From IMG/VR virus record IMGVR_UViG_3300020442_000005, positions 1 to 64,000 of that record: 64,000 nucleotides of DNA; one strand, given 5' to 3'. Below are positions 1 through 37,003 of the stretch, one piece after another. Each line of letters opens with the position of its first letter. Position 1 is the stretch's first letter. A model generated the notes under the pieces. The model worked only from the letters and a program-made list of their open reading frames with translations. It made no database searches and was not told where the DNA came from. Position numbers and translations under genes: made by a program.

Positions 1-540
1 GATCTTACCGTAGTTAATGATGCCGCGACAGCCTTAAATGAGTATGAGGACATGAGATATAGTTCCGTATTGCCCAGGATACCAACCGTCGTAGTTTCTG
101 ATTCGTATAACACGAGAAATCCACGCAAAGAAACATATAAAGACGGAACTGAGATGATACACATTGTTCGCAAACTGCCAAATGTTGTTGCATATATTCA
201 GACTACAAAAGGCAGAGAGGTCAAATCGCGTGATGAGTGGAACAAATTAATGCAGGGAAGACAACCAACTGGCGAGCTGACTTCTACAGACATCCCGCTG
301 AAATCGACAAAACTTTCACGATATGGCGCGCCAATTGCAAAGGTAATTAGAAAAGCACAGCAAGAAACTCGTACATATGATGAAATTGCGGTATACGCAG
401 ATATTAAACCGGCCATAAATAAGTTTTCCGGCAAGGCACGAAAGTGGGGCGGCGAAGTTCGTTACACTTTCTTTATAATCGTACCAAAAGAAACTTATGT
501 GCCAAGATCTAAGTTGAAAACTAAGAGAAAGTCGAAATGA
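1..540 (+). CDS. Hypothetical protein, 5'-truncated (frame is open from base 1: DLTVVNDAATALNEYEDMRY...)
   Basis: Frame 1 has no stop from 1 to 540; its stop overlaps the next ATG (ATGA). Confidence 0.7.
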   Translation, partial: DLTVVNDAATALNEYEDMRYSSVLPRIPTVVVSDSYNTRNPRKETYKDGTEMIHIVRKLPNVVAYIQTTKGREVKSRDEWNKLMQGRQPTGELTSTDIPLKSTKLSRYGAPIAKVIRKAQQETRTYDEIAVYADIKPAINKFSGKARKWGGEVRYTFFIIVPKETYVPRSKLKTKRKSK

Positions 541-1232
541 AAGTTACAAGAAGACAAATCAGAGAAGCAATAAGACGTGTGATAACAGAAAGCAAAATTA
601 CTCCAGAACCGCCATACATTACGCACGGTAATCCTGGATATCAAGAAGCGTCGTCCAAATGGAACATATGGTTTTTTGAAAACACTCGTGATTGGGCATG
701 GACAAACATGCCCGAACAAAAGGGGTGGAATACTGAAAATCTCATGTATGATTTTAGAACTTCCGATACTGGTGGTGCTGAAATAAAATACGGTATTGGT
801 TTTGGATATCGATGGAGCAAATATAGGAATAATACCCTGCGGTTAATTGTTATTCCGGAACCCGGCTATGGTCAGCCAGAAGGTATATATATGCGATTTG
901 AAATTGGGCTAGGTGGTATGAGGGATATGGATGCTCGATCAATGGCCGAGATGTATTTCCCGTTTAAGAAATACAAGCCGGCAAGGGCAAGGGATAAAGG
1001 TATGTCGGCTCCGGAGATTATAGAAGAGCTATCTTTTTACCATGACGAAATTGTAGAATGCATGCGTATCCTTGTACCTTTGGGTAGTAAAACCGTAAAA
1101 AGTCTGCCGGCTTCAAAATTTTACGATATAGTTTGGCCAAAGTTAGAAAAATATGCAGCGCCAGGTATGGACGAGCATATAAGATTAAGAGAAGAACGTA
1201 TATCACTACGAAACAAACGAATGGGATTATAA
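537..1232 (+). CDS. Hypothetical protein with MKVTRRQIREAIRRVITES leader
   Basis: ORF track; the leader matches the family at 9389-11533. Confidence 0.85.
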   Translation: MKVTRRQIREAIRRVITESKITPEPPYITHGNPGYQEASSKWNIWFFENTRDWAWTNMPEQKGWNTENLMYDFRTSDTGGAEIKYGIGFGYRWSKYRNNTLRLIVIPEPGYGQPEGIYMRFEIGLGGMRDMDARSMAEMYFPFKKYKPARARDKGMSAPEIIEELSFYHDEIVECMRILVPLGSKTVKSLPASKFYDIVWPKLEKYAAPGMDEHIRLREERISLRNKRMGL

Positions 1233-3387: not shown

Positions 3388-3389
3388 CC

Positions 3390-3608
3390 ATGCTTCTTAT
3401 GACTGGTGATGTTTTTTTACTGAGAGAAAAATACAGATCAAATGGATCGAACGGAATGGGCATTGTAATCATGATTGAAAGCCATGAAGGTCCTAATTTT
3501 ATCTGTTATGACTACATCGTTATGTTAGATAACGGAAATCTTATGAGAATAACTGAAAGCTGTGTTGAGGAAATTTATACCAACATTAATCAGCAAACAT
3601 TTGAATGA
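3390..3608 (+). CDS. Small hypothetical protein
   Basis: ORF directly follows matrixin; GD(V)F start typical of small phage beta-barrel proteins. Confidence 0.6.
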   Translation: MLLMTGDVFLLREKYRSNGSNGMGIVIMIESHEGPNFICYDYIVMLDNGNLMRITESCVEEIYTNINQQTFE

Positions 3609-3945
3609 TTAGGATGAGAAACGCAAGAGTTACACAACTCATAGTTTTTACTGTAAACATCGATTCATTCATATAGTACCATGTCATAATCGGAAAGGTG
3701 ATGTAGGAAAACACTGCTGCAGTGAATCTCACACTCCACAGTTCTCCAGTGGCTTCAAAACAAAATTTCGTTCCATACCAAAACGCAAGACCGGCCGGGA
3801 TCCCAAACAACACAGTTGCAAGGATAGGTTTGTTTTGCCAATAATCCCAAACAAACTGAGAGTTCCCGGCAAACCACCCAAAAATGTGACCAATAATAAA
3901 AAGTAAACAACCGTAAACCATTCTTATATCGTTAAATAGAAGCAT
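3586..3945 (-). CDS. 4-TM small membrane protein (SMR/DMT-like size and topology)
   Basis: Four hydrophobic segments in 119 aa. Confidence 0.7.
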   Translation of the reverse strand: MLLFNDIRMVYGCLLFIIGHIFGWFAGNSQFVWDYWQNKPILATVLFGIPAGLAFWYGTKFCFEATGELWSVRFTAAVFSYITFPIMTWYYMNESMFTVKTMSCVTLAFLILIIQMFAD

Positions 3946-3962
3946 AATCCTATCCTAAGTTT

Positions 3963-5360
3963 TTAAGTATCTTTCGGGTCCTCGTACCATTCTTCAATAA
4001 ATGACTCCCCTGTAAGCTCTTCAAGTTTGCGAATCATTTTCTCCATATTGATTCTTACAACTTTTCCAGTCCTAGTGTTCCTAGAAAAGTAATGCCACTC
4101 ACCTTCAGGATTGTGAGGTGATATTTGGGTCACGTTCTGTTGAGAATCACTAACAAATATCTCTGCGTGGCCGTTCACAAGCTTGGAGTATATTTGTGCA
4201 TGGTTGACAGTCAACGAAGGATCAGTTGTACCCTGGCAATTTAAGTGAAGATAATTAGAAATTGCAGCATCACCGGTAACATCCAGCTTGAAGTTCGGAG
4301 AAGTATTTCCTATTCCTATGTTACCATCAACCGTCAGGTTTGTGCTGTTTACGAGTTGTAAAGAGTCGTGTCTGAGTCGGGCTGTAATACCACTCGAGCC
4401 ATTCTTCATATTAGCAAACTCTATAATACCCTGTTCAGAACCGTCGGCGACAGAACCAATTTTCCCAGTTATCTTTGCGTAAGTCACATTTTGGTCAGCG
4501 TCGTTTTCACCTTGAAACTTAAGTTGGCCAAGATAGTCAGCGTTTGCTGGGGAAGAACTGTTTCTTTTTAGTTTGATGACAGGAGAAGCGCTACTTGAGT
4601 CTTCTGTTGTTTCTAAAAACAGCAGATCATCGGTCGTAGTGTTGTTCACGTGCAGTTGTGCGCTGTTAACTTTAACCTCATTCGGCCCTGAGCTCATTTT
4701 TTCTACTGTAAATAGATTAACCCCGCCAGCATCTAAATCGATTCTGTCATCCGTGAAATTAATTAACGTGTCGGTGTCACCGGTGTGCCTGATGTGTTGG
4801 TCAACGTATACGTTCCCTCCAAAAACAGCCGGTCCTGGAGATGTAAAAGCATCATTTGCATGGAGACTGCCTGATATGTATACAGAGCCACCAAACACTG
4901 CTTTGGCGTCAGTGGATCCAGATACGAAAAACACGACATCCGAAGGAAGAGCCTCAGCAGCTGCGGCAGTGTCGCTTTGACCATGTTCAAACTTTGCCTT
5001 ACCATCATCGTATATACGAAAGGGAAATTTTTGCGGATCACTACCAACGTTTGTTCTAGTTTTTAGGAAAAAATCTTGACTTCGTCCGGGAGATAGATAA
5101 ATGTTTTCTGCCTGGTCAAAAGCAAAAGATGCATACCAAGAGCTAGGATCGTCATCGTTTATAAATCTTAGAAAAGCGGTGTCCGGTTCTTTTTTAAATA
5201 TTGTAAGCCCGCCACCGCCCTCGGCATCGATGAACTGTGATCCTGTTACCACAAGTGCGTAATCTGAAGAATAACCATTACCATGGGCTGTGTTCCCGGT
5301 TACAATTGCGCCTTCACTAAACTTCATAGTGGCAGTGCCCATATTCTTTATTCTAGCCAT
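3963..5360 (-). CDS. Virion fibre-like beta-rich protein
   Basis: G/S/T/D-rich; shares FFVSGS..AVFGGSVYISGSL and HTGDTDTLINFTDDRI modules with 43876-49833; GIGNTSPNFKLDVTG fibre-type repeat. Confidence 0.7.
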   Translation of the reverse strand: MARIKNMGTATMKFSEGAIVTGNTAHGNGYSSDYALVVTGSQFIDAEGGGGLTIFKKEPDTAFLRFINDDDPSSWYASFAFDQAENIYLSPGRSQDFFLKTRTNVGSDPQKFPFRIYDDGKAKFEHGQSDTAAAAEALPSDVVFFVSGSTDAKAVFGGSVYISGSLHANDAFTSPGPAVFGGNVYVDQHIRHTGDTDTLINFTDDRIDLDAGGVNLFTVEKMSSGPNEVKVNSAQLHVNNTTTDDLLFLETTEDSSSASPVIKLKRNSSSPANADYLGQLKFQGENDADQNVTYAKITGKIGSVADGSEQGIIEFANMKNGSSGITARLRHDSLQLVNSTNLTVDGNIGIGNTSPNFKLDVTGDAAISNYLHLNCQGTTDPSLTVNHAQIYSKLVNGHAEIFVSDSQQNVTQISPHNPEGEWHYFSRNTRTGKVVRINMEKMIRKLEELTGESFIEEWYEDPKDT

Positions 5361-5480
5361 AAAATTGTACCTCCAAGTTCACCTACAACTTTTTACCCAA
5401 TTATATTTTTCTATTTATCATTAATTATGTATATTAGCGTGATAATTATATACATTCGTTCATATTTGTGGAGTTACTTT

Positions 5481-8108
5481 ATGTCTATACCAGACAGTAA
5501 AAAATTAAGAAAATATATAACGCAATTATTGAAAGAGCATATGCTACTCGAAGCCGCCGGTTCTATGGGTTTGGCAGCTGTACTTGCACGTGCCTTAGCC
5601 GACAAAATACTTGACGACGTCGATCGAATTGGCTTTGTATACATAGTTCAAAAACATAATGCACAATCGCGATGCAATATACCACTACTAGACGTCGTTG
5701 AAGATTTGGTGAAAAAAGACCAAGTTATAGCATTGAAAGTGCGTCCAAAGAAAAAGGAGTATAGCGTTATTGCTACTAGCTTCTCCAAGCGCATGTTGCC
5801 GAATGAGTTAGGCGCAGATAACGCAATTTTCGTGCAAAGCATAAGAAATCATGCATATCAGGATTACCCGGGCGATGCTATTGTATTGGGCAACGCTTAT
5901 TTTAACGATGTTAAAATCCCGGGATCGGGCGCGCATGGTTTAAGAAAGGAAGATTTAGACAAATTTGAAGCTATAGGGAATGATTTCCTTTCGAAGTACG
6001 TTAAATCCGCAGAGAATGAAAAGAAGATTCTCGAAGTGTTCGAATCCGTGGGCGCAGTTGGTTACTTTGCAGCTGCATTTATGGTATTTATAACCCAGGC
6101 CGAATCTGATGGCTCTCGTGGCCACGTATCCAGCTTATCGGCCACAAGCATGGGTGGAAAGCTAGTTATTGGTACCAATGCAATGACAGTTACAGCTGAG
6201 ACAACTGGCATATGGAATATGGGTATGTCATTTTTTTCGAATGATCAAATAGAACACATTAAAAAATCCATGGACTTACCTATCGGTCTTAACGTACCTA
6301 TAACAGTATCTCCAAAGCAGAGTTTTAATAATTTATCTAAACAAATGGTCGCATTTGACGAAAAGTTTCGTAGGATTATCGCTAGCAACACGACCTATAT
6401 ACACGAGTTGCAACACTTGATTCAACATGCCGGCTACCATACGCCATCTTCACAGTTAGATCCAGGCGCCGACGTCGACATAACCTCACCAACGCACCCG
6501 CTACATCCCTATAATGGTGACCCTCCAAACACTGCCGCAAGAGAAGCTGGTCTTGCGAAATCAAAAAGACCACCAGCCCAGCATATAAAGATTGTGTCTC
6601 AGATGCTAAAAGAACTGAACATAATAAAAGGTGAAGAAATAAAGATTTCCGGAATCAACAGCCCAGCATTCGAACTGGATGACGCAGCATTTTCATCCAC
6701 TACTATCGGGCTGTCGACAAGCATCTTTGTTAAAGAAAATGTATATCTAGAAGTGAACGTCGCCGATCACTTAAGTGATGTAGTTTTAAAACACATGTCG
6801 GATACGTATTTATCGGCACTTCCGTCAAAAAACATGTTTCCCGAGGAAAGAGAGGCTCAAATAAAAAGGTATGGTTCTGCAGCCGGGAAAAAATCGGTTG
6901 CAAGAAAATATCGTTTATTTCTAGCCGATATTCTTGCAGATATTGGAATATACACTTATCAAAAGTACATTTTTGATCGTACGGATCAAATAAAGGCTGA
7001 TATGGGGATTGGACCAAGAGATAAAACTATACCCGACGCATTAAAAGTCGCCTCTGAAAGGTTTCCGGACAGAACAGAAAAGGCGATCGAGCGTTTAAAT
7101 AAGTCTTTGTTAAATAAAGGCGGTAAACTATCAAAAGATTTAATCGAAAAAATGCGACCTGTATTTCCAACCATGGTTTTTTATTCGCGTAAATTGGGCG
7201 TTTTTATAGGTAAAGGTAAATACGGCCCACCCGGATGGATTAAGCAGCACCTATATATTGAATTCTTAGAAAATTATGATATAGACGAAGATCTATTGAA
7301 TGAGTTGAAAAAAGGGTCTGAAGACAGATATTATCTAAGTAAAAACCAAAAAGACCTAGGTCTCAGGTTATTAAAAGAGTTGGATTTAGTTTTGGTGATT
7401 GCACAGTCAGGTGCCGATACAGCTTTCATGGGTGAAGATGAAAGGCTTGAAGCAGAGGCCGGCCGGTCAGGCCGAGTAAGCCGAGGATATGCTTATTCAG
7501 GCTCACAATGGTATCAAAGGGCTAATGGATACACATGGCGAAGATTACAGACAGAATATGACGCTGAGTTTGTGACACAAACAGCTGGTTTTTTGTATGG
7601 CATCTATATACTAGGCACAGAGGACGATGCAACCGCAAATCGTATTTTAGCTCCAACGTATCTTATGGATTATTTTAGGCGATCTCCAAAGATTCAGCCT
7701 ATGATCGAGTTTTTGTTTGCATTGCTTGGAGAAGATATTACAAAGGTAATATCTGGTATAAAAAACTTTTCCAAGAAATCTAGACACAATTTCCAAGGAT
7801 TTATCGATCGCGATTTAGCAAAACAAAAGTCTGATCAGTACCGACGTTTGGCGATTGACATGATAGATAAGATTCAAAATATATCAGACGAAGAATTGAA
7901 TGACTTGCGAATAGATATAGCAAACAATAGCGTGGAAATGATATACGGTTCTAGAACAAAAAAAGCTACTCCAAAGCAAATCAATGATTTAACACCTGTA
8001 ATTAATGAATTTCTTGCAAGTGGAGGCTCGGTCGACCGCTTAACTCATTTACATGTAGAGACTGTAAAGGCTATAATAGGATTCGTTGGTAAAAAACTAT
8101 TGGAGTAA
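5481..8108 (+). CDS. Large hypothetical protein with HExxH motif (875 aa; start reassigned from 5283)
   Basis: GGAG RBS before ATG 5481; upstream extension is low-complexity intergenic DNA; YIHELQH at 6396-6416. Confidence 0.75.
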   Translation: MSIPDSKKLRKYITQLLKEHMLLEAAGSMGLAAVLARALADKILDDVDRIGFVYIVQKHNAQSRCNIPLLDVVEDLVKKDQVIALKVRPKKKEYSVIATSFSKRMLPNELGADNAIFVQSIRNHAYQDYPGDAIVLGNAYFNDVKIPGSGAHGLRKEDLDKFEAIGNDFLSKYVKSAENEKKILEVFESVGAVGYFAAAFMVFITQAESDGSRGHVSSLSATSMGGKLVIGTNAMTVTAETTGIWNMGMSFFSNDQIEHIKKSMDLPIGLNVPITVSPKQSFNNLSKQMVAFDEKFRRIIASNTTYIHELQHLIQHAGYHTPSSQLDPGADVDITSPTHPLHPYNGDPPNTAAREAGLAKSKRPPAQHIKIVSQMLKELNIIKGEEIKISGINSPAFELDDAAFSSTTIGLSTSIFVKENVYLEVNVADHLSDVVLKHMSDTYLSALPSKNMFPEEREAQIKRYGSAAGKKSVARKYRLFLADILADIGIYTYQKYIFDRTDQIKADMGIGPRDKTIPDALKVASERFPDRTEKAIERLNKSLLNKGGKLSKDLIEKMRPVFPTMVFYSRKLGVFIGKGKYGPPGWIKQHLYIEFLENYDIDEDLLNELKKGSEDRYYLSKNQKDLGLRLLKELDLVLVIAQSGADTAFMGEDERLEAEAGRSGRVSRGYAYSGSQWYQRANGYTWRRLQTEYDAEFVTQTAGFLYGIYILGTEDDATANRILAPTYLMDYFRRSPKIQPMIEFLFALLGEDITKVISGIKNFSKKSRHNFQGFIDRDLAKQKSDQYRRLAIDMIDKIQNISDEELNDLRIDIANNSVEMIYGSRTKKATPKQINDLTPVINEFLASGGSVDRLTHLHVETVKAIIGFVGKKLLE

Positions 8109-8110
8109 AC

Positions 8111-8374
8111 GTGGCGGATAAAAAAGATAAATGGGAAGATAATGTTGGTGGTTTTTCAATTGTAGCTGGAAAGAAAGTTTCTTTTTATGTTGATAAAGAG
8201 TGTATTTTGTGTTCAGTCTGCGAAGAGGTAGCGCCTTCCAATTTTAGAATGAACGATGACGACAGCCACGATATATGCTTTAAGCAGCCAGAAAACGAAC
8301 AGGAACTAGAAGAGTGTTATGAAGCGCTTGACAGTTGCCCGGTAGAGGCAATTGGTGACGATGACATCGAATAA
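8111..8374 (+). CDS. Single-cluster [4Fe-4S] ferredoxin
   Basis: CILCSVC (CxxCxxC) ... CPVEAI; GTG start with GGAG RBS. Confidence 0.9.
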   Translation: MADKKDKWEDNVGGFSIVAGKKVSFYVDKECILCSVCEEVAPSNFRMNDDDSHDICFKQPENEQELEECYEALDSCPVEAIGDDDIE

Positions 8375-8388
8375 AATGGCATAAATAT

Positions 8389-8417
8389 TTGTAAAGATAT
8401 ACATAGTTCTGTATTAT
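8389..8417 (+). promoter_or_regulatory. Sigma70-like promoter TTGTAA-N17-TATTAT
   Basis: Exact 17-nt spacing upstream of tk; same geometry recurs at 7 other sites. Confidence 0.7.
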
Positions 8418-8437
8418 TTATTTGCAAAGGAGCAAAA

Positions 8438-8995
8438 ATGAAACATGAATTTAGAATGTATGTCGGACCAATGTTCGGCGGCAAAACAACACGTATGTTA
8501 TCTCAACTTGAGCGATATGCATATATGGGTGAAGATGCGTTGATATTCAAGCCTAGGGTCGACGAAAGATACGAAACAGATTGGGTCTGTTCACATACTG
8601 GAGTTAAACGCCAAGCGCAGAGAGTTGAAACCGGTGCAGATATTCGTAAATGGGTTGCAACATATGTCGGCCGCACACCATCCGTGATTGCAATAGACGA
8701 AGCGTTCATGATACCAGGCGTAGGATTTGCTGCCATAACCTTGTTCAGAGAAGGTCATACGGTTCTTGTTTCTTCCTTGCAGTTGTCTTCCGATGGCACT
8801 CCATACGAGGAAGTGCAACGGATGTTTCCATACGCGACCTATGTTGCCGTATGCCCTGCTGTCGATCCAATTTCAAAGCAAGACGCTTACTATACCGAAA
8901 AATATGGTGGTAGGAAAGATCATGCAATCGAAGTTGGTGGCGCAGAAATGTATAGACCACGTGACTGGGAGGGTTTCTTTGGTAGTGATCGATGA
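8438..8995 (+). CDS. tdk: Thymidine kinase (type II)
   Basis: GPMFGGKTT Walker A, IAIDEA Walker B, lasso IEVGGAEMYRP. Confidence 0.92.
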   Translation: MKHEFRMYVGPMFGGKTTRMLSQLERYAYMGEDALIFKPRVDERYETDWVCSHTGVKRQAQRVETGADIRKWVATYVGRTPSVIAIDEAFMIPGVGFAAITLFREGHTVLVSSLQLSSDGTPYEEVQRMFPYATYVAVCPAVDPISKQDAYYTEKYGGRKDHAIEVGGAEMYRPRDWEGFFGSDR

Positions 8996-9007
8996 ATAAG
9001 TGAATAA

Positions 9008-9366
9008 GGGGCCGTAATGGCTTCGACGGGGTAGAATCAAGAGGAGTGTGCATGCAGGTAAGATACGACCTTAACAGTTCAAAACAAATAGTTGCAAACA
9101 ATAACGACAACTTCGAAGTAGCTTTAGCTGCATAATCGACGCCGGTGTCTCTTCCGGTGTGAAACAAGAGGCTTAGCCAGTTAGTCGAGGCAAACATATC
9201 AAGACTACAATGGTTATCCTGGTAACAGGTGGAATCTCCAGCCAGAGGGAGATTGGTGGAAAATTATTTGGCTAGTTTGTTAATTAACAACATAATTAAC
9301 TATGCATGTGAATGACACAAATTAAGACTGCTGCGGACGCGGGTTCGACTCCCGCCGGCTCCACCA
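9008..9366 (+). ncRNA. ssrA: tmRNA, tag reading frame ANNNDNFEVALAA* at 9094-9135
   Basis: 5' GGGGCCG pairs with 3' CGGCTCC-ACCA with a G3:U pair; T-arm GCGGGTTCGACTCCCGC; AAATAGTT before resume codon GCA; ALAA C-terminus. Confidence 0.96.
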
Positions 9367-9388
9367 CTTACTTACTATTGAGCATAAA

Positions 9389-9661
9389 ATGAAAATTACG
9401 AGAAGCCAACTAAGAAGAATCATTAGAGAATCGTACAAATACAAAGATCCATACCCATCTCGCCGGAGACAGCAAAAGAAGCAGAATTGGGTAATTGTGT
9501 GTGATTGGACACAACATTCTGATCCTTCAAAGCATAAGTATGGCGAAGCTGTATATGCTGAATATTTTGGCACTAAGAGAGATGCTGAACGTAAGGCTTT
9601 GCAATACGCAAGGGAAGAACATGCACCAATGTATGTTGAACCAGGTTTTGAAGAGGGCTAA
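9389..9661 (+). CDS. Leader-family protein (MKITRSQLRRIIRES)
   Basis: ORF track, shared leader. Confidence 0.85.
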   Translation: MKITRSQLRRIIRESYKYKDPYPSRRRQQKKQNWVIVCDWTQHSDPSKHKYGEAVYAEYFGTKRDAERKALQYAREEHAPMYVEPGFEEG

Positions 9662-9662
9662 G

Positions 9663-9962
9663 ATGAAACTAACAAAACGCCAACTTCAATTAATTGTTAG
9701 AGAATCTCTTGTAGAAGCTTACGAAAAAACTGAGTATATTCAAGCAGGTCTTGGTGAAAGGTACAGAATGAAAGAAAGTATGGATATGGATCCCTCGTTC
9801 TATGCTGATGTATCGGAACGTTATGATGGAGACATAGCCTATGAACGCGTCATGGCAGTAATTGAGGTTTTAGCAGCATATCCCGCCGCACATTCATATT
9901 TAGATATAGAGGACGTTGCGAGCGAAATCATCGACTCACTAGAAGAAAAAGGTTTAATTTAA
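9663..9962 (+). CDS. Leader-family protein (MKLTKRQLQLIVRES; start reassigned from 9495)
   Basis: ATG 2 nt after the previous stop; leader begins here. Confidence 0.85.
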   Translation: MKLTKRQLQLIVRESLVEAYEKTEYIQAGLGERYRMKESMDMDPSFYADVSERYDGDIAYERVMAVIEVLAAYPAAHSYLDIEDVASEIIDSLEEKGLI

Positions 9963-9991
9963 CCATAAACATAAAGTCATAGAGGAAAACA

Positions 9992-10249
9992 ATGAAAATC
10001 ACAAGAAGACAATTGAAAAAAATCATTAAAGAAGAGAAAGCAAAACTTATACAAGAGGCACAGTACGGAGGCGGACAGTACGGTTTACGTAGTGATGACA
10101 GAGCCGGACAGCAAAAAGCAATTGAGATCGCATTAGCTCATTTGCAAATGCTTGATGACGCATTGTATGAAGCCGGCATTGAAGTTGGAATGGGTCAACT
10201 TAGAGGTATAGTGATGGATGCATTGAATCACCCAACATCCGGATATTAA
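9992..10249 (+). CDS. Leader-family protein (MKITRRQLKKIIKEE)
   Basis: GAGG RBS, shared leader. Confidence 0.85.
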   Translation: MKITRRQLKKIIKEEKAKLIQEAQYGGGQYGLRSDDRAGQQKAIEIALAHLQMLDDALYEAGIEVGMGQLRGIVMDALNHPTSGY

Positions 10250-10557
10250 TGATGAAAATCACAAAAAGACAACTTCGAAGAATTATTAAGGAAGAAAAAT
10301 CAAAGATTATGTCGGAGGCTTTTGGAAGTCCATCCGGCAAAGATTTTGGCTTATATGATCAGATTCAAGAAAAACTTGAATATGAACTATTGATTAATAT
10401 TCAAAGTCAAATATTAAATACTCTTCCTCCTGCAATTCGTCGTACCATTGATTTAGGAACAGAAGCAGAGATGATGGGCTTTGATGATTTAATGGAACAA
10501 GTCCGAGAATGGTTTGAGAATTATGTATCGGCGATGACAGATCTGGATCGGAGATAA
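10249..10557 (+). CDS. Leader-family protein (MMKITKRQLRRIIKEE)
   Basis: TAATG coupling, shared leader. Confidence 0.85.
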   Translation: MMKITKRQLRRIIKEEKSKIMSEAFGSPSGKDFGLYDQIQEKLEYELLINIQSQILNTLPPAIRRTIDLGTEAEMMGFDDLMEQVREWFENYVSAMTDLDRR

Positions 10558-10560
10558 ACA

Positions 10561-10980
10561 ATGAAATTAACAAAAAGACAACTTCGAAGAATTATTCGTG
10601 AAGAAAAGAAAAGATTGATCAAAGAAAGCTCTATGGAGTTGTCATATCAATACGCAGAGCAATTGCTGCAAGATGCCGCCCGTGAATTAGCCGATAATTT
10701 TAGCGAGGGTCAATTAGGCAATGGTGCGCATGACGCCAAAATGAACGGCGAAAATGCGCTCTATGAATTACTGACTCTAGCTGCAATGAGAACAAGAGGG
10801 TTAATAGAACATAAGAAAAAAGCAAATTTGCTCAACGAGTATATTGATCGCGATTATCTCTTAGATCGTCTCATGGAGGTACTCATTGAAGAAGGCGCAG
10901 TTAAACCGGGGCCGGGTGCGCGTGATGATGCTTTACAATACTTAGGTTTCTTAGTCAAGGTATATGACAGAGGCAGATAA
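10561..10980 (+). CDS. Leader-family protein (MKLTKRQLRRIIREE)
   Basis: GGAG RBS, shared leader. Confidence 0.85.
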   Translation: MKLTKRQLRRIIREEKKRLIKESSMELSYQYAEQLLQDAARELADNFSEGQLGNGAHDAKMNGENALYELLTLAAMRTRGLIEHKKKANLLNEYIDRDYLLDRLMEVLIEEGAVKPGPGARDDALQYLGFLVKVYDRGR

Positions 10981-10981
10981 A

Positions 10982-11533
10982 GTGAAGATAACTAGAAAAC
11001 AACTAAGACTAATTTTAGAGACAGCTGCTAAGCAAAAAGATAAAGAGGCTGTGTTTTCAATTATATACACTTCGGCATATGTCCAAGAATATATGGAAGA
11101 TCTTTATAATGCCATATGGTCCTCTTTTGAAAATCGCGGCGAACAAGATGATTATAAGATTGTTAATGTACTTGAAGATCTAACTAGCATGCTTACAAGA
11201 CCGGTCATGGACTTGGGATCTGAATACAGCCTATACACAAAAGAATTGGATGCTGCTGATGATGAGGGAATAGAATTCGAAGCCGGCAATGCCGAAAAGT
11301 TCGATTTCGAGGAAAGTGTTTATCTGGGAATAGAGAATATTAATCGCTTTATTAACGAACAGACTCCGATGGGAATGAGCGCGCTTGAAGCATTAAGGCA
11401 TGTTAAAGATCGTAAGATCAATATCGGATTGATTAAAAGAACTACAGATTTTTTACTTTCTCTAATGGATGATGATAGAGTCTTATCTGTTCTTGACCAA
11501 ATCGATTATGAGTATCAGAGGATGAAGATGTGA
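10982..11533 (+). CDS. Leader-family acidic protein (GTG start: MKITRKQLRLILET)
   Basis: GTG 2 nt after the previous stop, GAGG 8 nt upstream; the ORF track start 10964 is in the same frame. Confidence 0.8.
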   Translation: MKITRKQLRLILETAAKQKDKEAVFSIIYTSAYVQEYMEDLYNAIWSSFENRGEQDDYKIVNVLEDLTSMLTRPVMDLGSEYSLYTKELDAADDEGIEFEAGNAEKFDFEESVYLGIENINRFINEQTPMGMSALEALRHVKDRKINIGLIKRTTDFLLSLMDDDRVLSVLDQIDYEYQRMKM

Positions 11534-12450
11534 TCACTAACGGTAACGTACTTTATATATTTGATTTCGATGATACTTTAGCAATGACTAATAGCGCAGT
11601 TCGCGTTATTAGCGCGTCAGGCCAGGTAAAAAGACTTGATAGCAGAGAGTTTGCTAAATATCGATATCAAGCAGGTGATCAACTAGACTTTTCAGAGTTT
11701 ACTCGAGCTGAAGGAACATTGATCGATAACACAGTACAAGAGATGCAAGAAGCAATTTCCCGGTACGGGATAGAAAATGTCTTTATTGTAACAGCCCGGG
11801 CTGAAGATGAGCCTGTGTTTAACTTTTTAGACTCTTTTGGGCTGGTTGTGCCTCAGGTGATCGCAACAGAAGGTTCAGCCGGAAAAGCACCATGGCTAAC
11901 AAAAACCCTTCTTTTGGGAAATTACGACAAAGTGATCGTTTATGAAGACTGTCGTAAAAACATAAAAATGCTCAGAGATGTTGTAGAAGCCTACAACGAA
12001 GAATTAAATAGAGAAGTACTGTACAGTGCAGTATGCATTTTACCGGATGGTAGACAACAAATGATTGAATCAAGAATTAGAAGGTTTGTAAGAAAAATTA
12101 TTCTAACAGAAGGAGTTAGAAATACAACTCAAGGCGCAAATGCGATTATAAACGTCATGTTGGATAATCCAGACTATAGTATTCGGAATGCTGCAGCTGA
12201 CGTATTTTGGAACTTTGAACAGCTTGGAAACCGCCGAGCTGCTCGATTTCATAGGGCTTCTATGGATAGGGTCGGCGAACAGATACAAAAACGGCTAGCG
12301 AAGACTGGAGCTGATCCACATAATCAACCAGAAGGGTTTGTGTATACGCCAGAAGAAAAAGCGCTAGTCGATCTATACCATAGCCGGGTTCCTACGAATC
12401 AACACGGTGAGTACGGCATTAAACTGGCTGATTGGAGAAAATTTAGATGA
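11530..12450 (+). CDS. HAD-superfamily phosphatase-like protein with C-terminal extra domain
   Basis: FDFDDTL (DxD motif I), IVTAR motif II, GK..W, YEDC..N motif IV. Confidence 0.8.
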   Translation: MITNGNVLYIFDFDDTLAMTNSAVRVISASGQVKRLDSREFAKYRYQAGDQLDFSEFTRAEGTLIDNTVQEMQEAISRYGIENVFIVTARAEDEPVFNFLDSFGLVVPQVIATEGSAGKAPWLTKTLLLGNYDKVIVYEDCRKNIKMLRDVVEAYNEELNREVLYSAVCILPDGRQQMIESRIRRFVRKIILTEGVRNTTQGANAIINVMLDNPDYSIRNAAADVFWNFEQLGNRRAARFHRASMDRVGEQIQKRLAKTGADPHNQPEGFVYTPEEKALVDLYHSRVPTNQHGEYGIKLADWRKFR

Positions 12451-13457
12451 GAGCAAAAAAAGGCGAATGGTTTAGTTTGTCTTGGGATATAAATGATAAG
12501 TATGATCCAATAGCTTGGGAACAGTTTAAAAATTGCCCTAGATTTCTTTATGCCGAAGAAAATAGTAATCAGGTTGAAGGAAAAATAATTAATGAGTTTG
12601 ATAGACTTAGGCTTACTAGTATTTTTCTTACTTCAATGTTTCTTAAAAACGAAGACGGTCTTAAAGTACCCACTCATTACAGAGTAGGAATATTTATGCC
12701 TGGAGACAACACAGCCTATGATAAGTGGATAAAGGAATACCACAGATTGAATCACGAGGTAACAGAGCAAATCCGTGCTAAGGAAATGTTACAACAAAAA
12801 AGTATATACCTAGAGCATGCTGCTAGAATCATCAGGCATGATATGCATTCAGGAATAAATACCTACATTCCTCGAGGTTTAAAATCACTGCTAGATAAAC
12901 TGCCGGAAGAGGTAATCAAAGAGCACCGTCTAGAGCTAAGCATTAAATTATTGGAAGAGGGCTTGAATCACGCTCAAAAAGTATACCAAGGAGTGTACGC
13001 ATTTACGAATCTAGTAAAAGACAAGTCTCAGATAGAGAAACAAAAACATAACATCAAAGACATCCTGGTTGAACATTTTAGTTCGAACGCTTACGGTCAT
13101 CTAATTGACATACAGGACATGGGTGATTTCTATGTTAATAAATCACTTTTTTGTACAGCTATTGAAAATTTTGCAAAGAACGGTTTAGCATACAACGATT
13201 CAGGTCCAGACAGAAAGGTTAGAATTTACAGCAGATATGTAGATGAAATAACAATTGCTGATAACGGCCGCGGATTAAGTCAACAGGAATACGATTATCA
13301 AACAATGCCTTTCTTGAGAGAAGAAACAAACAATGTGAATCAAATAACTGGATTGGGCATAAATATAGCTAACGCCATCCTAGTAGAACATGGCTTTAAA
13401 GTGTCAGTCGATGAACTTGAACACGGCACTGCAATTCGAATCACGATGAAAAATTAG
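12447..13457 (+). CDS. Soluble sensor histidine kinase
   Basis: RHDMHSG H-box, ENFAKNG N-box, DNGRG G1, GLGINI G2. Confidence 0.88.
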   Translation: MRAKKGEWFSLSWDINDKYDPIAWEQFKNCPRFLYAEENSNQVEGKIINEFDRLRLTSIFLTSMFLKNEDGLKVPTHYRVGIFMPGDNTAYDKWIKEYHRLNHEVTEQIRAKEMLQQKSIYLEHAARIIRHDMHSGINTYIPRGLKSLLDKLPEEVIKEHRLELSIKLLEEGLNHAQKVYQGVYAFTNLVKDKSQIEKQKHNIKDILVEHFSSNAYGHLIDIQDMGDFYVNKSLFCTAIENFAKNGLAYNDSGPDRKVRIYSRYVDEITIADNGRGLSQQEYDYQTMPFLREETNNVNQITGLGINIANAILVEHGFKVSVDELEHGTAIRITMKN

Positions 13458-13466
13458 GCCAAAAAA

Positions 13467-14744
13467 ATGTTAACAAAAAGATCCAAAGCGTGTTTAACCA
13501 TTTCGCTGTCCGTGATGGCAGGATTTTTTATTGAGCAAACTCTGGTTATTTCTGGTTTTGTTTTGCCATCATACTTCTCTGCTCTTTTTGGATACGCATG
13601 CACTATTTTGTTTACTGTGTCTTTTATATGTTTTGCAATCGATTTTTTATATACAGTAAAATCAAAAAAGCAAATTTATGATGACAAGTTAGCAGCGATC
13701 CATACGTCTAACATGGTTGCAATATATGATAACGAGGGCTTGATAATTTCAGCAAACCAAAATTTTTGTGATACTACCGGTTACAGCAACTCTGAGCTCG
13801 TTGGTTCAACCCACTGCATGGTTATGCCAAGAGAATTGATTAGATCAGAAGAGTACAGATCATTTTGGGAACAATTGAACCGGGGCATTTTCCTTAGAGG
13901 TAAATATAGACGACGAAAAAAATGTGGCAACGACTATTGGTGTTATGCAACATACAGCCCCATTCGCAACGGATCTGGAAAAGTTTATCAAATAATCGAA
14001 ATATCGTCGGACGTCACAGAAGAATATTTAGCCCAACAAGAACTTGCTCACAAAAACATATACCTAGAACACGCAGCCAAAATTTTAAGACACGACATGC
14101 ATTCCGGTATAAACACGTATATCCCGCGCGGAATTCGTAGTCTAGAAAGACGAATTAATCAAGATGTCATCGATGAGTTACATATTGAGTCACCTTTAAA
14201 ACTTATAAAGGAAGGCCTTCTACATGCACAGAGGGTTTACAGAGGGGTTTATGAATTCACAAACCTGGTAAAAAAAGATGCAGAAATGCAAAGATCAAAA
14301 TATGATCTTAAATCAATCTTGGAAGAATACATATCTAAAACAGCGTACGCTGACCAAGTTATTATTGAAGAGTTGATTAATCTTGAGGTTAATGAGGCGT
14401 TATTCTGTACTGCAATAGATAACTTGATCAGAAATGGATTAAAATACAACGATTCAGTGTCAAAACTTGTAAGAGTAAAAATGCACGACCAGTCTCATAT
14501 TGCGGTAGAAGACAACGGCCGCGGATTATCTCAGAAAGAATTCGAAGAGTTTTGCAAGCCTTACCAACGCAAAAAAGGTCAAAAGGAACCGGGTTCTGGC
14601 CTGGGATTAAATATATCAGTCGCAATATTTAATGAGCATGGCTTTAGAATGTCGATTGATGAATTGCAACAGGGAACAAGGATTCTTATTCAACTAAACG
14701 AAGATTATCTAGATGATTGCACATTGATAAGAAATTTAAAATAA
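13467..14744 (+). CDS. Membrane PAS/PAC sensor histidine kinase
   Basis: 2 TM; PAS ANQNFCDTTGYSNSELVG..H..FW..L..G; PAC YW..ATYSPI..SDVTE; HDMHSG, DNLIRNG, EDNGRG, GSGLGL. Confidence 0.93.
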   Translation: MLTKRSKACLTISLSVMAGFFIEQTLVISGFVLPSYFSALFGYACTILFTVSFICFAIDFLYTVKSKKQIYDDKLAAIHTSNMVAIYDNEGLIISANQNFCDTTGYSNSELVGSTHCMVMPRELIRSEEYRSFWEQLNRGIFLRGKYRRRKKCGNDYWCYATYSPIRNGSGKVYQIIEISSDVTEEYLAQQELAHKNIYLEHAAKILRHDMHSGINTYIPRGIRSLERRINQDVIDELHIESPLKLIKEGLLHAQRVYRGVYEFTNLVKKDAEMQRSKYDLKSILEEYISKTAYADQVIIEELINLEVNEALFCTAIDNLIRNGLKYNDSVSKLVRVKMHDQSHIAVEDNGRGLSQKEFEEFCKPYQRKKGQKEPGSGLGLNISVAIFNEHGFRMSIDELQQGTRILIQLNEDYLDDCTLIRNLK

Positions 14745-14785
14745 TTTCATATATTTATATTCGTGGATCTTTGTTGGAGTTTGTA

Positions 14786-15217
14786 ATGATAAAGTCGATA
14801 CTTTTAGTTGATGATGAAAATTTATTTCATCTTGTTTTTGAAGATGCTTGTAGCCTGCTTGATATAACCTTGGATCTGCGCAGCATTACATCATCAGATG
14901 CTGCAGCAAAACTTTTTGCCGAGTGGCAAAACGACCCAAAAGGCAAACCAGAATGTGTTTTCGTTGATTTAAATATCATAGGATCATCATTTGATGGTAT
15001 TGAACTTATTAAAAAAATTAACTATGAATATGGCAATGGCGTTGTTGTTGGAATCATATCATCTTCTGCTGACCAAGCCGAGATAGAAAAATCAAAACTG
15101 GCAGGATCCCAATTTTGGATTATTAAATCAGATGATATCGAACCCAGATTAGAACTTTTTAAGAACGATTATGCTGGATATAAAAACCGCACTAACGAGT
15201 TCAAAGTATATCGATGA
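14786..15217 (+). CDS. Single-domain response regulator (CheY/Rcp-like; start reassigned from 14717)
   Basis: ILLVDDE acidic pocket, VFVDLN phosphoacceptor, DGIELIKKI, ISSS, IIKS; GGAG RBS. Confidence 0.92.
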   Translation: MIKSILLVDDENLFHLVFEDACSLLDITLDLRSITSSDAAAKLFAEWQNDPKGKPECVFVDLNIIGSSFDGIELIKKINYEYGNGVVVGIISSSADQAEIEKSKLAGSQFWIIKSDDIEPRLELFKNDYAGYKNRTNEFKVYR

Positions 15218-15810
15218 AACTTACAAAAGAAATAGAGGATTCTTTTATTGCTTTATTAGAGGATCGTGGTGTACAACTAGAAGGAAACATTTTAAAGCTA
15301 ATAAAGACTGATAATCCAGAATTTAAAAAATACATCGACAACGCCAAAGAAGCCGATGCTAAAGCAAGAAGAGATAGACTTGCAATAACTAAACAAGTTC
15401 AATCTCAAATGCAAGATCTAGAACTAAAAAAAACTCAGTTAGAAGAAAAAGCAGTCGAAAACGAAGACCTTTTAAAAAATTTAGAAGAAGCGCTTGAAGC
15501 TGCTGAGGGTGCAAAAAAGGCTGCAATAGACGATCTAGATCTACTACAAAAGAAAACTCAGTTTGAACTAATAGGAAACATTGTAAACGTTGCCCTTTGG
15601 GTCATCATGGCAGTAGGCGTTACAACGACTGTTCTTTACGTTGTGGCACTTTTTCTAAATGGAAATGGTCCGGACACAACTCTGATTGGCAATACATGGT
15701 CAAATTTGCTTGGTATATTATTGACAAATTCTTTTTCTATAATTGGCACAATTATGGGCGTCAAATATGCAAGTGAAACGACTCCAAAAAAACCGGGTGA
15801 ATCTGTGTAA
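15214..15810 (+). CDS. Coiled-coil protein with two C-terminal TM helices
   Basis: Heptad-rich AKEADAKARR..LEEALEAAEG; two hydrophobic helices; ATGA-coupled to the receiver gene. Confidence 0.8.
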   Translation: MKLTKEIEDSFIALLEDRGVQLEGNILKLIKTDNPEFKKYIDNAKEADAKARRDRLAITKQVQSQMQDLELKKTQLEEKAVENEDLLKNLEEALEAAEGAKKAAIDDLDLLQKKTQFELIGNIVNVALWVIMAVGVTTTVLYVVALFLNGNGPDTTLIGNTWSNLLGILLTNSFSIIGTIMGVKYASETTPKKPGESV

Positions 15811-33053: not shown

Positions 33054-33830
33054 ATGAGATTGAATGAAAGAAGATTAAGAAGGGTTATTAGAGGCCTAGT
33101 TTTAGAATTTGTGTCACAAATCCCACAGCCGCCGCCGGCATTAGAAAAGCTGCCTGGATATGCAAAAAATAAAGAGATGAATATCTTCAATGATTTGCAT
33201 GACCTTGCTAACAGCGCATTGCGAGACGAAGTTTTCAAACCAATTGATGATTCATATAGAAAGGGCCTCGATCAACCAAACGCAGATATCCAAGAGCCGG
33301 ACCACCTAAGAGATCCAGCTAGAAACGACTACTCGGAGTTTCTAGTTTGGGACATTGATGATGATCCACATCCAGACGTAATCCGCGGAATGAAACCAAA
33401 GGCTGGATACATGAAGTTATCTTTAAGCGCAACGGATCTAAGTCGAGAAGCAGGTTTATACTCTAAGGCTGATACGGTCGCGCGACTCAAGGACGGCCGG
33501 CATTTTGCAGAAATGAGTGGTCCCGCAGCTGGTGTTGCAATGACCGCTGGTGTAAAAGCTATTTTAGATCCAGAAAAAGTTCAAGAGTTACTCGGAAGTA
33601 GAAAAAAGATTCAATGGTTTGGAGTACATCCACACGATCAAGGTCATCCGGATTTTCAGGATAAAAACTCACGCCTCGAGGCAGAAGGCGCAAGAAGAAA
33701 ATCATCGGCAGATTACAAACCAGAAGATGAGACGGTACGGACGCCTGGCATGTATGATGGATGGTATGTACGAATGCTCGGCATGCCACCAAAGCCACAT
33801 GCTAAAATGATTTTCGGTGAAATAAACTAA
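33054..33830 (+). CDS. Hypothetical protein with leader variant MRLNERRLRRVIRGLVLE
   Basis: ORF track; leader-like N-terminus. Confidence 0.78.
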   Translation: MRLNERRLRRVIRGLVLEFVSQIPQPPPALEKLPGYAKNKEMNIFNDLHDLANSALRDEVFKPIDDSYRKGLDQPNADIQEPDHLRDPARNDYSEFLVWDIDDDPHPDVIRGMKPKAGYMKLSLSATDLSREAGLYSKADTVARLKDGRHFAEMSGPAAGVAMTAGVKAILDPEKVQELLGSRKKIQWFGVHPHDQGHPDFQDKNSRLEAEGARRKSSADYKPEDETVRTPGMYDGWYVRMLGMPPKPHAKMIFGEIN

Positions 33831-35704: not shown

Positions 35705-35708
35705 AAAA

Positions 35709-36992: not shown

Positions 36993-37003
36993 GGGAGCAA
37001 ATA

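What the first reader, a model, noticed from the sequence alone, without database searches (positions are those of the whole stretch)
9389..11533. Tandem array of six unrelated proteins sharing one N-terminal leader: candidate capsid-targeted internal-protein cassette locus
Seen: six consecutive, tightly coupled genes start MKITRSQLRRIIRES, MKLTKRQLQLIVRES, MKITRRQLKKIIKEE, MKITKRQLRRIIKEE, MKLTKRQLRRIIREE and MKITRKQLRLILET. After a further hydrophobic-x-E (LVEA, LIQEA, IMSEA, LIKES) the bodies share no visible similarity. Established: T4 internal proteins carry a short N-terminal capsid-targeting sequence removed by prohead protease after (I/L/F)-x-E, they are injected with the DNA, IPI blocks the GmrSD nuclease, and the ipI locus lies beside the tRNA cluster and is hypervariable. 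Inference: this is an analogous but distinct system of fixed tag plus interchangeable payload, next to tk and tmRNA, and the payloads are candidate injected anti-defence proteins. It is the strongest novel-system candidate in the window.
Basis: partly seen in the sequence, partly recalled or inferred. Interest (0 to 1): 0.87.

Follow-up and report, generated by a model that had tools for sequence, protein, structure and literature searches.

The report
Shared head-targeting leader on variable phage proteins
Six neighbouring genes of a 273-kb uncultured T4-related phage encode unrelated small proteins that all start with the same roughly 20-residue leader. This leader marks over ten thousand protein families in environmental phages, and it most likely loads cargo into the forming capsid and is then cut off, as with the T4 internal proteins, though no experiment has shown this.

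Summary
Six back-to-back + strand genes (9389-11533) start with MK[IL]T[KR]xQL[RKQ]x[I][ILV][KR]E. Their bodies show no detectable similarity to each other or to any known family.

The window is bases 1-64000 of a 273-kb IMG/VR contig. Elsewhere that contig encodes a T4-type portal, a gp21-family (Peptidase_S77) prohead protease, a scaffold and a gp23-type capsid protein. A second leader array lies directly after the capsid gene and a third lies upstream of the terminase.

- **Spread:** the leader is virus-specific. It occurs in more than 120 IMG/VR stretches and in 10,565 protein clusters out of 1.84 billion. In cellular genomes it was found only in a few MAG contigs.
- **Position:** it often forms tandem arrays and often abuts the protease gene.
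- **Cleavage motif:** leader conservation stops at about residue 22, at a hydrophobic-x-Glu motif. That is the known cleavage motif of T4 gp21.
- **Origin:** the leader resembles the N-terminus of a conserved head-module protein.
- **Turnover:** a relative with about 87% identical flanks has a different array, with junctions at the leaders.

Best reading, at about 0.55: a capsid-core targeting propeptide on exchangeable cargo. That would be a new variant of the T4 capsid-targeting-sequence and internal-protein system. Cleavage, packaging, injection and anti-defence roles are all untested.

The parts
9389..9661 (+). g1, 90 aa: leader MKITRSQLRRIIRES plus a unique, mildly basic body (pI 8.1). 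It has only the first I-x-E site, at residues 12-14.
   Evidence: (34.9 bits to the independent leader HMM)
9663..9962 (+). g2, 99 aa: leader MKLTKRQLQLIVRES followed by LVE|A, then a unique acidic body. The ATG lies 2 nt after the g1 stop.
   Evidence: 20.7 bits; its first 27 residues recur in the 220-aa ORF of relative L122
9992..10249 (+). g3, 85 aa: leader MKITRRQLKKIIKEE followed by KAKLIQE|A, then a unique acidic body.
   Evidence: 32.7 bits
10252..10557 (+). g4, 101 aa: leader MKITKRQLRRIIKEE followed by KSKIMSE|A. The body has only 2 full-length homologues among 5.8 billion proteins.
   Evidence: 42.0 bits
10561..10980 (+). g5, 139 aa: leader MKLTKRQLRRIIREE followed by KKRLIKE|S. It is probably a fusion of two cassettes, because the relative L122 has leader plus only the last 58 residues.
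   Evidence: (31.4 bits)
10982..11533 (+). g6, 183 aa with a GTG start: degenerate leader (V/M)KITRKQLRLILE with a 5-residue deletion relative to homologues that carry the canonical leader. It has 4 homologues in 5.8 billion proteins.
   Evidence: (6.3 bits)
9008..9366 (+). tmRNA gene, the upstream boundary of the array. The same junction is kept in the relative L122.
   Evidence: (RF00023, 114.7 bits)
11530..12450 (+). Downstream boundary: a 306-aa ORF matching a phage polynucleotide-kinase family over its N-terminal half (phrog_415). It carries an internal leader-like stretch (RIRRFVRKIILTE) near residue 185. The orthologue in L122 stops just after that stretch. The stretch is not significant by the HMM.
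537..1232 (+). 231-aa protein that starts with the second leader allele (MKVTRRQIREAIRRVITES). It is a possible further member outside the array.
   Evidence: L254 is this site
33054..33830 (+). 258-aa protein starting MRLNERRLRRVIRGLVLEF, possibly a diverged leader. This is weak and rests on inspection only.
   Evidence: no family; it did not appear among the leader-HMM hits

Best explanation
**What it is.** Each of the six genes encodes a short basic amphipathic leader joined to an unrelated, usually acidic, small body. The leader is about 14-22 residues: MK[IL]T[KR]xQL[RK]xII[KR]E[ES], often followed by xxx-hydrophobic-x-E.

**Proposed mechanism.**
1. The leader is a capsid-core targeting propeptide of a Far-T4-type phage.
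2. During prohead assembly it docks the protein onto the scaffolding core.
3. The phage's gp21-family (Peptidase_S77) prohead protease then cuts after Glu, at I-x-E (residues 12-14) and/or at the second hydrophobic-x-E near residue 22.
4. The body is left free inside the head. By analogy with the T4 internal proteins, it would leave with the DNA at infection.
5. The leader-coding stretch repeated at every gene start also acts as a recombination point. Cassettes are therefore swapped, fused and split, and the arrays become hypervariable.

**Shown:**
- the tag and the arrays;
- the diversity and turnover of the bodies;
- the T4-type head genes in the same genome;
- the placement of leader genes inside head modules;
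- the cleavage-type motif at the boundary between conserved and variable sequence;
- the similarity of the leader to the N-terminus of a conserved head-module protein.

**Inferred:** docking, cleavage, retention in the virion, ejection, and any role in the host.
For: 1. **Same genome.** L055 equals window 1584-9592 with no mismatch, and L217 places the window at contig bases 1-64000. The contig encodes Portal_T4 (1e-68), Peptidase_S77 (8e-27, with catalytic His and Ser motifs aligned to T4 gp21) and Gp23 (8e-76).

2. **More arrays near the head genes.** A second array of 5 leader genes starts 76 nt after the capsid gene. A third group of 3 lies upstream of the terminase.

3. **Synteny elsewhere.** Of 118 independent IMG/VR leader loci (median length 7.7 kb), 49 hold a T4-type portal, protease, scaffold, capsid gene or the conserved 280-aa gene in the flank. 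In 22 of them a leader gene abuts the protease gene on the same strand. In 19 of those it lies directly upstream, where T4 has genes 67 and 68. In reverse, 25 of 77 protease-centred loci hold a leader gene, always on the protease strand.

4. **Where conservation ends.** Leader conservation falls to background after about residue 22. A [LIMV]-x-E ends at residue 22 in 34%, at 21 in 18% and at 18 in 15% of 187 proteins, against 2% per position in the bodies. T4 gp21 cuts after L/I-x-E, and T4 internal-protein propeptides are 10-19 residues long (PMC9026906).

5. **The capsid cleavage site is kept.** The capsid proteins of this clade keep LL[KR]E|[AS] at the position matching T4 gp23 LTE|A.

6. 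**Link to a conserved head gene.** The conserved 148-aa gene two genes downstream of the protease starts with a leader-like sequence. hhalign of the leader profile against that family gives E 5.5e-6 with no canonical member included, and 2.3e-9 with one. Its orthologue in L020 carries the canonical leader.

7. **Site content of bodies versus core proteins.** L-x-E is enriched in the scaffold (21 observed vs 10.3 expected), the 148-aa protein (8 vs 1.6) and the 280-aa protein (10 vs 3.8). It is not enriched in the leader-protein bodies (z -1.6).

8. **Body diversity.** 187 leader proteins fall into 146 body clusters, and only 2 of 158 same-locus pairs are similar. Where a domain is recognisable, it starts right after the leader, as with AAA_33 at residues 28-212.

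9. **Turnover.** Relative L122 has about 87% identical flanks but a replaced array. Only the leader stretches align, and one junction lies just after a leader.

Against: - There is no proteomic or biochemical evidence at all.
- The window's own array is not in the head module. It lies between a tmRNA and a polynucleotide-kinase-like gene.
- No T4-type late promoter was found near any array. Promoter and terminator counts are at shuffle level, so expression time is unknown.
- The bodies are mostly acidic (median pI 5.0), whereas PMC9026906 describes the T4 internal proteins as basic and DNA-associated.
- g1 and g6, and 41 of 186 leaders elsewhere, lack the second site.
- The leader also occurs inside long ORFs. 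Of 128 internal copies, 41 are not preceded by Met. An N-terminal position is therefore not obligatory.
- Close relatives by protease identity (L126-L129, 73-75%) have no canonical leader near their head genes.
- The leader shows no sequence similarity to T4 gp67 or gp68, or to the scaffold N-terminus.
Confidence: 0.55

Rival explanations
1. The leader proteins are accessory prohead-core or scaffold proteins, like T4 gp67 and gp68. The leader anchors them in the core, they help shape or fill the prohead, and they are then degraded and expelled. On this view nothing is delivered to the host.
For: - Many leader genes sit between portal and protease, where T4 has genes 67 and 68.
- The bodies are acidic, like scaffolds.
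- The conserved 148-aa head-module protein shares the leader and is rich in L-x-E.
- PMC9026906 notes a head-assembly phenotype for one T4 internal-protein mutant.
Against: - The bodies are not enriched in L-x-E, unlike the scaffold and the 148-aa protein.
- Body diversity is extreme, and content is replaced between phages with about 87% identical flanks. That fits dispensable cargo better than assembly parts.
- Some bodies are enzyme-like, such as the AAA_33 kinase domain.
- Arrays also lie far from the head module, as in the window.
Confidence: 0.2
2. The leader is a protein-binding or oligomerisation helix unrelated to the capsid. It might target a common host or phage partner, and the arrays would be host-takeover genes acting in the cytoplasm.
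For: - The window's array lies among nucleotide-metabolism and RNA genes (tk, tmRNA), not head genes.
- Small acidic unique proteins are typical of phage takeover genes.
- Internal leader copies show that the N-terminus is not required.
- No late promoter was found.
Against: - This does not explain the strong, same-strand association with portal, protease and capsid genes.
- It does not explain why conservation ends at the gp21-type motif.
- It does not explain the sharing of the leader with a conserved head-module protein.
Confidence: 0.15
3. The conservation is at the nucleic-acid level. The repeated gene start would be a translation-initiation or regulatory element, or a recombination cassette, and the peptide itself would have no role.
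For: - The leaders are direct DNA repeats of 65-76% identity.
- Junctions of rearrangements fall at them.
- Several genes lack a clear Shine-Dalgarno sequence.
Against: - 53 of 128 identical residues are encoded by different codons, and third-position identity (0.62) is lower than first-plus-second (0.70).
- The same peptide is kept across 10,565 clusters.
- It is kept in internal copies without a start codon.
- Recombination at the repeats is better seen as a consequence than as the function.
Confidence: 0.05

Closest known systems
T4 internal proteins (IPI, IPII, IPIII) with their capsid targeting sequence, processed by the gp21 prohead protease
   Same: - Unrelated small proteins share a short N-terminal propeptide-like tag.
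- The genome encodes a gp21-family protease.
- The tag ends in hydrophobic-x-Glu.
- The genes are not conserved between relatives.
- PMC3012670 describes the T-even internal proteins as a highly diverse set with only a conserved targeting sequence. PMC9026906 gives propeptides of 10-19 residues and the L/I-x-E motif.
   Different: - The tag has a different consensus and is longer (14-22 residues), with two candidate sites.
- The bodies are mostly acidic, not basic.
- Arrays reach up to 13 genes, and there are at least 14 tagged genes in this genome.
- Polyproteins with 2-4 tags exist.
- The tag is spread over more than 10,000 protein clusters in uncultured Far-T4-type phages.
- Nothing has been shown experimentally.
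- T4 internal-protein sequences were not fetched, so no direct alignment with the T4 tag was made.
T4 prohead core proteins gp67 and gp68
   Same: In 19 loci a leader gene occupies the same slot, between portal and protease. These are small acidic proteins of the head module.
   Different: No sequence similarity was found. The bodies are not L-x-E rich. The window's array is not in that slot.
Propeptide-bearing head and ejection proteins of giant phages (phiKZ, SPN3US), cut by diverged gp21 homologues
   Same: Many head-internal proteins carry N-terminal propeptides that are cut after Glu at a short motif, and redundant sites occur within propeptides (PMC9026906).
   Different: As far as the papers read here say, those propeptides are not one shared consensus tag. 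The phages belong to another lineage, and their motif differs.
Far-T4 phages (reference Rhodothermus phage RM378; Flavobacterium phage vB_FspM_immuto)
   Same: The closest cultured capsid proteins are immuto at 43.6% identity, Microcystis phage Mel-JY01 and RM378. immuto has the same head gene order and one leader-like protein, immuto35A_190 (23.3 bits).
   Different: The Far-T4 genomic survey (PMC4360716) contains no occurrence of 'prohead', 'motif', 'gp21' or 'internal protein', so it does not describe such a leader. The first 50 kb of immuto have no leader gene.

Membership tests
T4-type capsid-targeting-sequence / internal-protein system | One short N-terminal tag shared by otherwise unrelated proteins of the same phage | tested here: met
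   Six genes in the window, plus at least 8 more on the same contig.
T4-type capsid-targeting-sequence / internal-protein system | The genome encodes a gp21-family (Peptidase_S77) prohead protease and a T4-type scaffold and capsid | tested here: met
   Pfam Peptidase_S77 8e-27, Portal_T4 1e-68 and Gp23 8e-76 on the same contig.
T4-type capsid-targeting-sequence / internal-protein system | The tag ends in the protease motif L/I-x-E | tested here: met
   I-x-E at residues 12-14 in g1-g5 and in all leaders collected elsewhere, where the search pattern itself required it; g6 has I-L-E at 11-13. A second [LIMV]-x-E at residues 18-22 is 7- to 17-fold over the body rate. This is sequence evidence only.
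T4-type capsid-targeting-sequence / internal-protein system | The tag is actually removed by the prohead protease | not testable with these tools
   Needs N-terminal mass spectrometry or an in vitro cleavage assay.
T4-type capsid-targeting-sequence / internal-protein system | The mature proteins are in the virion and are ejected into the host | not testable with these tools
   Needs virion proteomics and ejection assays.
T4-type capsid-targeting-sequence / internal-protein system | Sequence similarity of the tag to the T4 tag | not tested
   T4 internal-protein genes were not fetched. The leader HMM found nothing in 15.7 kb of the T4 head region.
T4-type capsid-targeting-sequence / internal-protein system | Basic, DNA-associated mature proteins | tested here: not met
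   Median body pI is 5.0, and 64% are below 6. The window bodies have pI 4.1-4.9, except g1 at 8.1.
T4-type capsid-targeting-sequence / internal-protein system | The genes are poorly conserved between related phages | tested here: met
   L122 against the window. g4 has 2 and g6 has 4 full-length homologues in 5.8 billion proteins.
T4 prohead core proteins gp67/gp68 | Sequence homology to gp67 or gp68 | tested here: not met
   BLAST and hhalign find nothing.
T4 prohead core proteins gp67/gp68 | The gene lies between portal and protease | tested here: not met
   Not met for the window's array, which lies between a tmRNA and a polynucleotide-kinase-like gene. Met for leader genes in 19 other loci.
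Any curated protein family or solved structure | A significant match of the leader or a body | tested here: not met
   Pfam, PHROGs, NCBIfam and PADLOC. PDB for g5, g6 and the leader profile.

The most novel reading that the evidence does not exclude
The leader, together with its second allele M[KR]ITE[SR][KR]LRxIIRxVI[KA]ES, is a general and easily searchable packaging tag of Far-T4-type phages. On this reading it marks more than 10,000 families of proteins that are loaded into capsids, trimmed by the prohead protease and injected with the DNA. That would include enzyme cargo and multi-cargo polyproteins cut apart inside the head. It would be a large, unexplored reservoir of first-minute host-takeover and anti-defence effectors, exchanged between phages as cassettes by recombination at the tag.
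Probability: 0.3. Interest if true: 0.85.

Novelty: new variant of a known kind. Interest (0 to 1): 0.68.

Why it matters
What phages inject along with their DNA is known for only a few model phages. In T4 the injected proteins include an inhibitor of a host restriction nuclease (PMC3012670).

If this leader is a capsid-loading tag, one short motif would let anyone list candidate injected proteins straight from metagenomes. That covers more than 10,000 clusters, nearly all without known function, for an abundant group of aquatic phages that are mostly uncultured.

It would also give a natural tag for loading foreign proteins into these capsids, as was done with the T4 tag.

The locus further shows how a shared gene start can drive cassette exchange, fusion and splitting.

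If instead the proteins are only assembly helpers, the finding still defines a large uncharacterised family of head-module proteins.

Tried and rejected
- **Family and structure searches.** Pfam, PHROGs, NCBIfam and PADLOC on the six proteins, and PDB sequence searches on g5, g6 and the leader profile, found nothing significant.
- **Cultured phages.** Near and distant DNA searches of the region found no match. tblastn of g4 and of a 25-residue canonical leader found no match.
- **Literature.** A string search for six leader variants returned 0 papers. 'Capsid targeting sequence' together with marine and metagenome terms returned 0 papers.
- **Promoters and terminators.** The T4 late-promoter motif TATAAATA occurs nowhere in the head-module locus L061, which holds the start of array 2, and not within 4 kb of the window's array. 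Sigma-70-like promoters and terminators are at shuffle level.
- **Leader mimics the scaffold N-terminal helix:** rejected (hhalign E 0.21).
- **Leader or the 148-aa protein homologous to T4 gp67 or gp68:** rejected.
- **Leader-like stretches** at the probable start of the 5283-8108 ORF and inside the 11530-12450 ORF did not appear among the HMM hits. They are kept only as notes.
- **Contaminated model.** My iterated model of the 148-aa protein picked up leader proteins through the shared N-terminus. It was therefore left out of the synteny count, which fell from 55 to 49 loci.
- **Controls without the leader.** The T4 head region, the cyanophage P-HM1 head region and Pseudomonas phage Aura all scored 4.2 bits or less.
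- **More relatives of g6** in the JGI metagenome contigs: none found.
No folds and no fold searches were obtained.
Full report
**1. The observation**

The region 9389-11533 holds six + strand genes separated by 1 to 29 nt:
- g1 9389-9661
- g2 9663-9962
- g3 9992-10249
- g4 10252-10557
- g5 10561-10980
- g6 10982-11533, with a GTG start

All six begin with MK[IL]T[KR]xQL[RKQ]x[I][ILV][KR]E. g6 carries a degenerate version.

- A strict regex over all six reading frames of the window hits only these six genes.
- The degenerate DNA pattern hits five times against 0.00 expected in shuffles.
- A leader HMM built only from other contigs scores g1-g5 at 21-42 bits and g6 at 6 bits.
- More distant homologues of g6 carry the canonical leader, and g6 has a 5-residue deletion in it.
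- The bodies have no pairwise similarity.
- They match nothing in Pfam, PHROGs, NCBIfam or PADLOC, and g5 and g6 match nothing in the PDB.
- Conservation is at the protein level. Of the identical residues in codons 2-15, 41% are written with different codons.
- The array starts 23 nt after a tmRNA gene. Thymidine kinase lies upstream of that.

**2. What genome this is**

The window is bases 1-64000 of IMG/VR contig IMGVR_UViG_3300020442_000005, 273 kb long. No cultured phage is similar at the DNA level.

About 120 kb downstream, the contig has a T4-type head module. The order is terminase, portal (Portal_T4), a conserved 280-aa gene, a gp21-family prohead protease (Peptidase_S77), small genes that include a 148-aa protein, a very acidic scaffold, and a gp23-type capsid protein.

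- The catalytic His and Ser motifs of the protease align with those of T4 gp21.
- The nearest cultured capsid proteins are Flavobacterium phage immuto, Microcystis phage Mel-JY01 and Rhodothermus phage RM378.
- RM378 is the reference of the Far-T4 group (PMC4360716).

**3. The leader is general**

These hold 204 leader ORFs, often in tandem and with up to nine in one locus.
- A profile of the first 30 residues finds 10,565 clusters with E of 0.001 or better among 1.84 billion representative proteins.
- In 596 Gb of species-representative bacterial and archaeal genomes the pattern occurs in only 12 stretches. All are on MAG contigs. One is a 305-kb contig with 19 leader genes that is probably a mis-binned phage.
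- No paper in the searchable library contains the motif.
- A second allele, M[KR]ITE[SR][KR]LRxIIRxVI[KA]ES, is also widespread. It occurs in the window at 537.

**4. Anatomy of the tag**

Positions 15-22 were not constrained by my search pattern, yet they are still conserved. Glu is at 15 in 77%, a hydrophobic residue (L, I or M) at 16 in 70%, hydrophobic residues (L, V, I or M) in about 40-50% at 19 and 20, and Glu is the commonest residue at 21 and 22 (27% and 40%). After residue 22 the information content drops to background.

A [LIMV]-x-E ends at residue 22, 21 or 18 in 34%, 18% and 15% of 187 proteins. The rate in the bodies is 2% per position.

T4 gp21 cuts after L/I-x-E, and the T4 internal proteins have propeptides of 10-19 residues that target them to the core (PMC9026906). 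The capsid proteins of this clade keep LL[KR]E|[AS] at the position matching the T4 gp23 site LTE|A. The protease therefore probably keeps the T4 specificity. That step is an inference.

**5. Link to the head**

On the window's own contig:
- a second array of five leader genes begins 76 nt after the capsid gene;
- three more leader genes lie upstream of the terminase.

In other contigs:
- 49 of 118 independent leader loci carry T4-type head genes in flanks of a few kb;
- in 22 loci a leader gene abuts the protease gene on the same strand, and in 19 of these it is directly upstream, the slot of T4 genes 67 and 68;
- of 77 loci chosen only by their protease, 25 have leader genes, all on the protease strand.

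The conserved 148-aa head-module protein begins with a leader-like sequence. hhalign gives E 5.5e-6 without any canonical member and 2.3e-9 with one. Its orthologue in L020 carries the canonical leader.

L-x-E is enriched in the scaffold, the 148-aa protein and the 280-aa protein, as expected for core proteins that are degraded. It is not enriched in the leader-protein bodies.

**6. Cargo and turnover**

- 187 unique leader proteins fall into 146 body clusters, of which 124 are singletons. Only 2 of 158 same-locus pairs are similar.
- Of 150 scanned, only a few have Pfam domains: AAA_33 twice, DUF6321, FliG_C, DUF6745, tRNA_lig_CPD, EF-hand and PepSY.
- In one protein the AAA_33 domain starts at residue 28, right after the leader.
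- g4 and g6 have 2 and 4 full-length homologues among 5.8 billion proteins.

A Tara contig, L122, shares the tmRNA end at 100% identity and the downstream genes at 86-87%. Between them it has a different set of leader genes:
- only the leader stretches align;
- its g5 counterpart is leader plus the last 58 residues of g5;
- one ORF holds two leaders.

Many database proteins have 2-4 leader copies, and some internal copies lack a start codon.

**7. Interpretation**

The best-supported model is a capsid-core targeting propeptide on exchangeable cargo, removed by the S77 protease. That would be a distinct and far more widespread variant of the T4 capsid-targeting-sequence system.

I put this at about 0.55, because every functional step is inferred. 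The points against it are these:
- the window's array lies outside the head module;
- expression timing is unknown;
- the bodies are acidic rather than basic;
- internal copies of the leader exist;
- several close relatives lack canonical leaders near their head genes.

The rivals are as follows:

| Rival | Confidence |
|---|---|
| Expendable core or scaffold accessories that are not delivered | 0.2 |
| A binding helix of cytoplasmic takeover proteins | 0.15 |
| A nucleic-acid-level element | 0.05 |

**8. Limits**

- T4 internal-protein sequences were not fetched, so the two tags were not aligned directly.
- Loci are short, so absence of head genes in a flank says little.

Noticed in passing
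window 9008-9366 (+): A phage-encoded tmRNA (Rfam RF00023, 114.7 bits; ARAGORN tag peptide ANNNDNFEVALAA). The leader array starts 23 nt after it, and the relative L122 keeps this junction.
   Followed up: partly
window 12105-15784: This stretch holds the C-terminal extension of the 306-aa ORF, two histidine kinases (one with a PAS domain) and a receiver-domain protein, i.e. a phage-borne two-component set. It is absent from the relative L122, which otherwise continues collinearly at 87% identity.
   Followed up: partly
window 34294-38929: A DUF444 (YeaH-like), SpoVR and PrkA kinase trio, all with very strong Pfam matches, carried by a phage.
   Followed up: no
window 5283-8108 (probable start 5481): An 875-aa protein with a leader-like N-terminus (KKLRKYITQLLKEHMLLEA) and a HELQH metalloprotease-like motif. 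It matches no family in Pfam, PHROGs or NCBIfam, and the leader resemblance did not appear among the HMM hits.
   Followed up: partly
window 537-1232; L125:536-976; 62 IMG/VR stretches (L237-L298): A second widespread leader allele, M[KR]ITE[SR][KR]LRxIIRxVI[KA]ES, also sits on variable bodies and is sometimes in tandem. The conserved protease-adjacent family occurs with either allele.
   Followed up: partly
P0126, P0128, P0131, P0165 (protein database): Single ORFs carry 2-4 leader-plus-body units. Of 128 internal leader copies, 41 are not preceded by Met. They are either true polyproteins or fused cassettes. The residues before internal copies (such as E-N-K) look like translated ribosome-binding sites.
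   Followed up: partly
window 10561-10980 (g5) against L122:1808-2014: g5 looks like two cassettes fused. The relative has leader plus only the last 58 residues, and g5 residues around 80-92 (LIEHKKKANLLNE) resemble the remains of a leader.
   Followed up: partly
L205, L211, L212 (NHDW01000006.1, 305 kb) and L207, L210 (PBIO01000025.1, 101 kb): Contigs binned as Methylococcaceae and Halobacteriovorax MAGs carry 19 and 11 leader genes, including 13 within 8 kb. They are probably mis-binned phages.
   Followed up: no
L202 (Pseudomonas phage vB_PpuM-Aura, gene 5, 5261-6979): The body domain of the leader protein that sits upstream of the protease (EYQKFFKKALEK.GKSIP...) also occurs without the leader. 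It is in a 572-aa protein between portal and head protease of a cultured Pseudomonas putida phage.
   Followed up: partly
window 43876-49833: A 1985-aa protein with a YadA_head repeat match, probably a fibre or adhesin. It is followed by a long run of 190-300-aa ORFs that were not analysed.
   Followed up: no
L061:9280-9344: A strong GC-rich hairpin followed by a T run lies between the capsid gene and the first gene of the second leader array. That array is therefore reached by read-through or has its own promoter.
   Followed up: no
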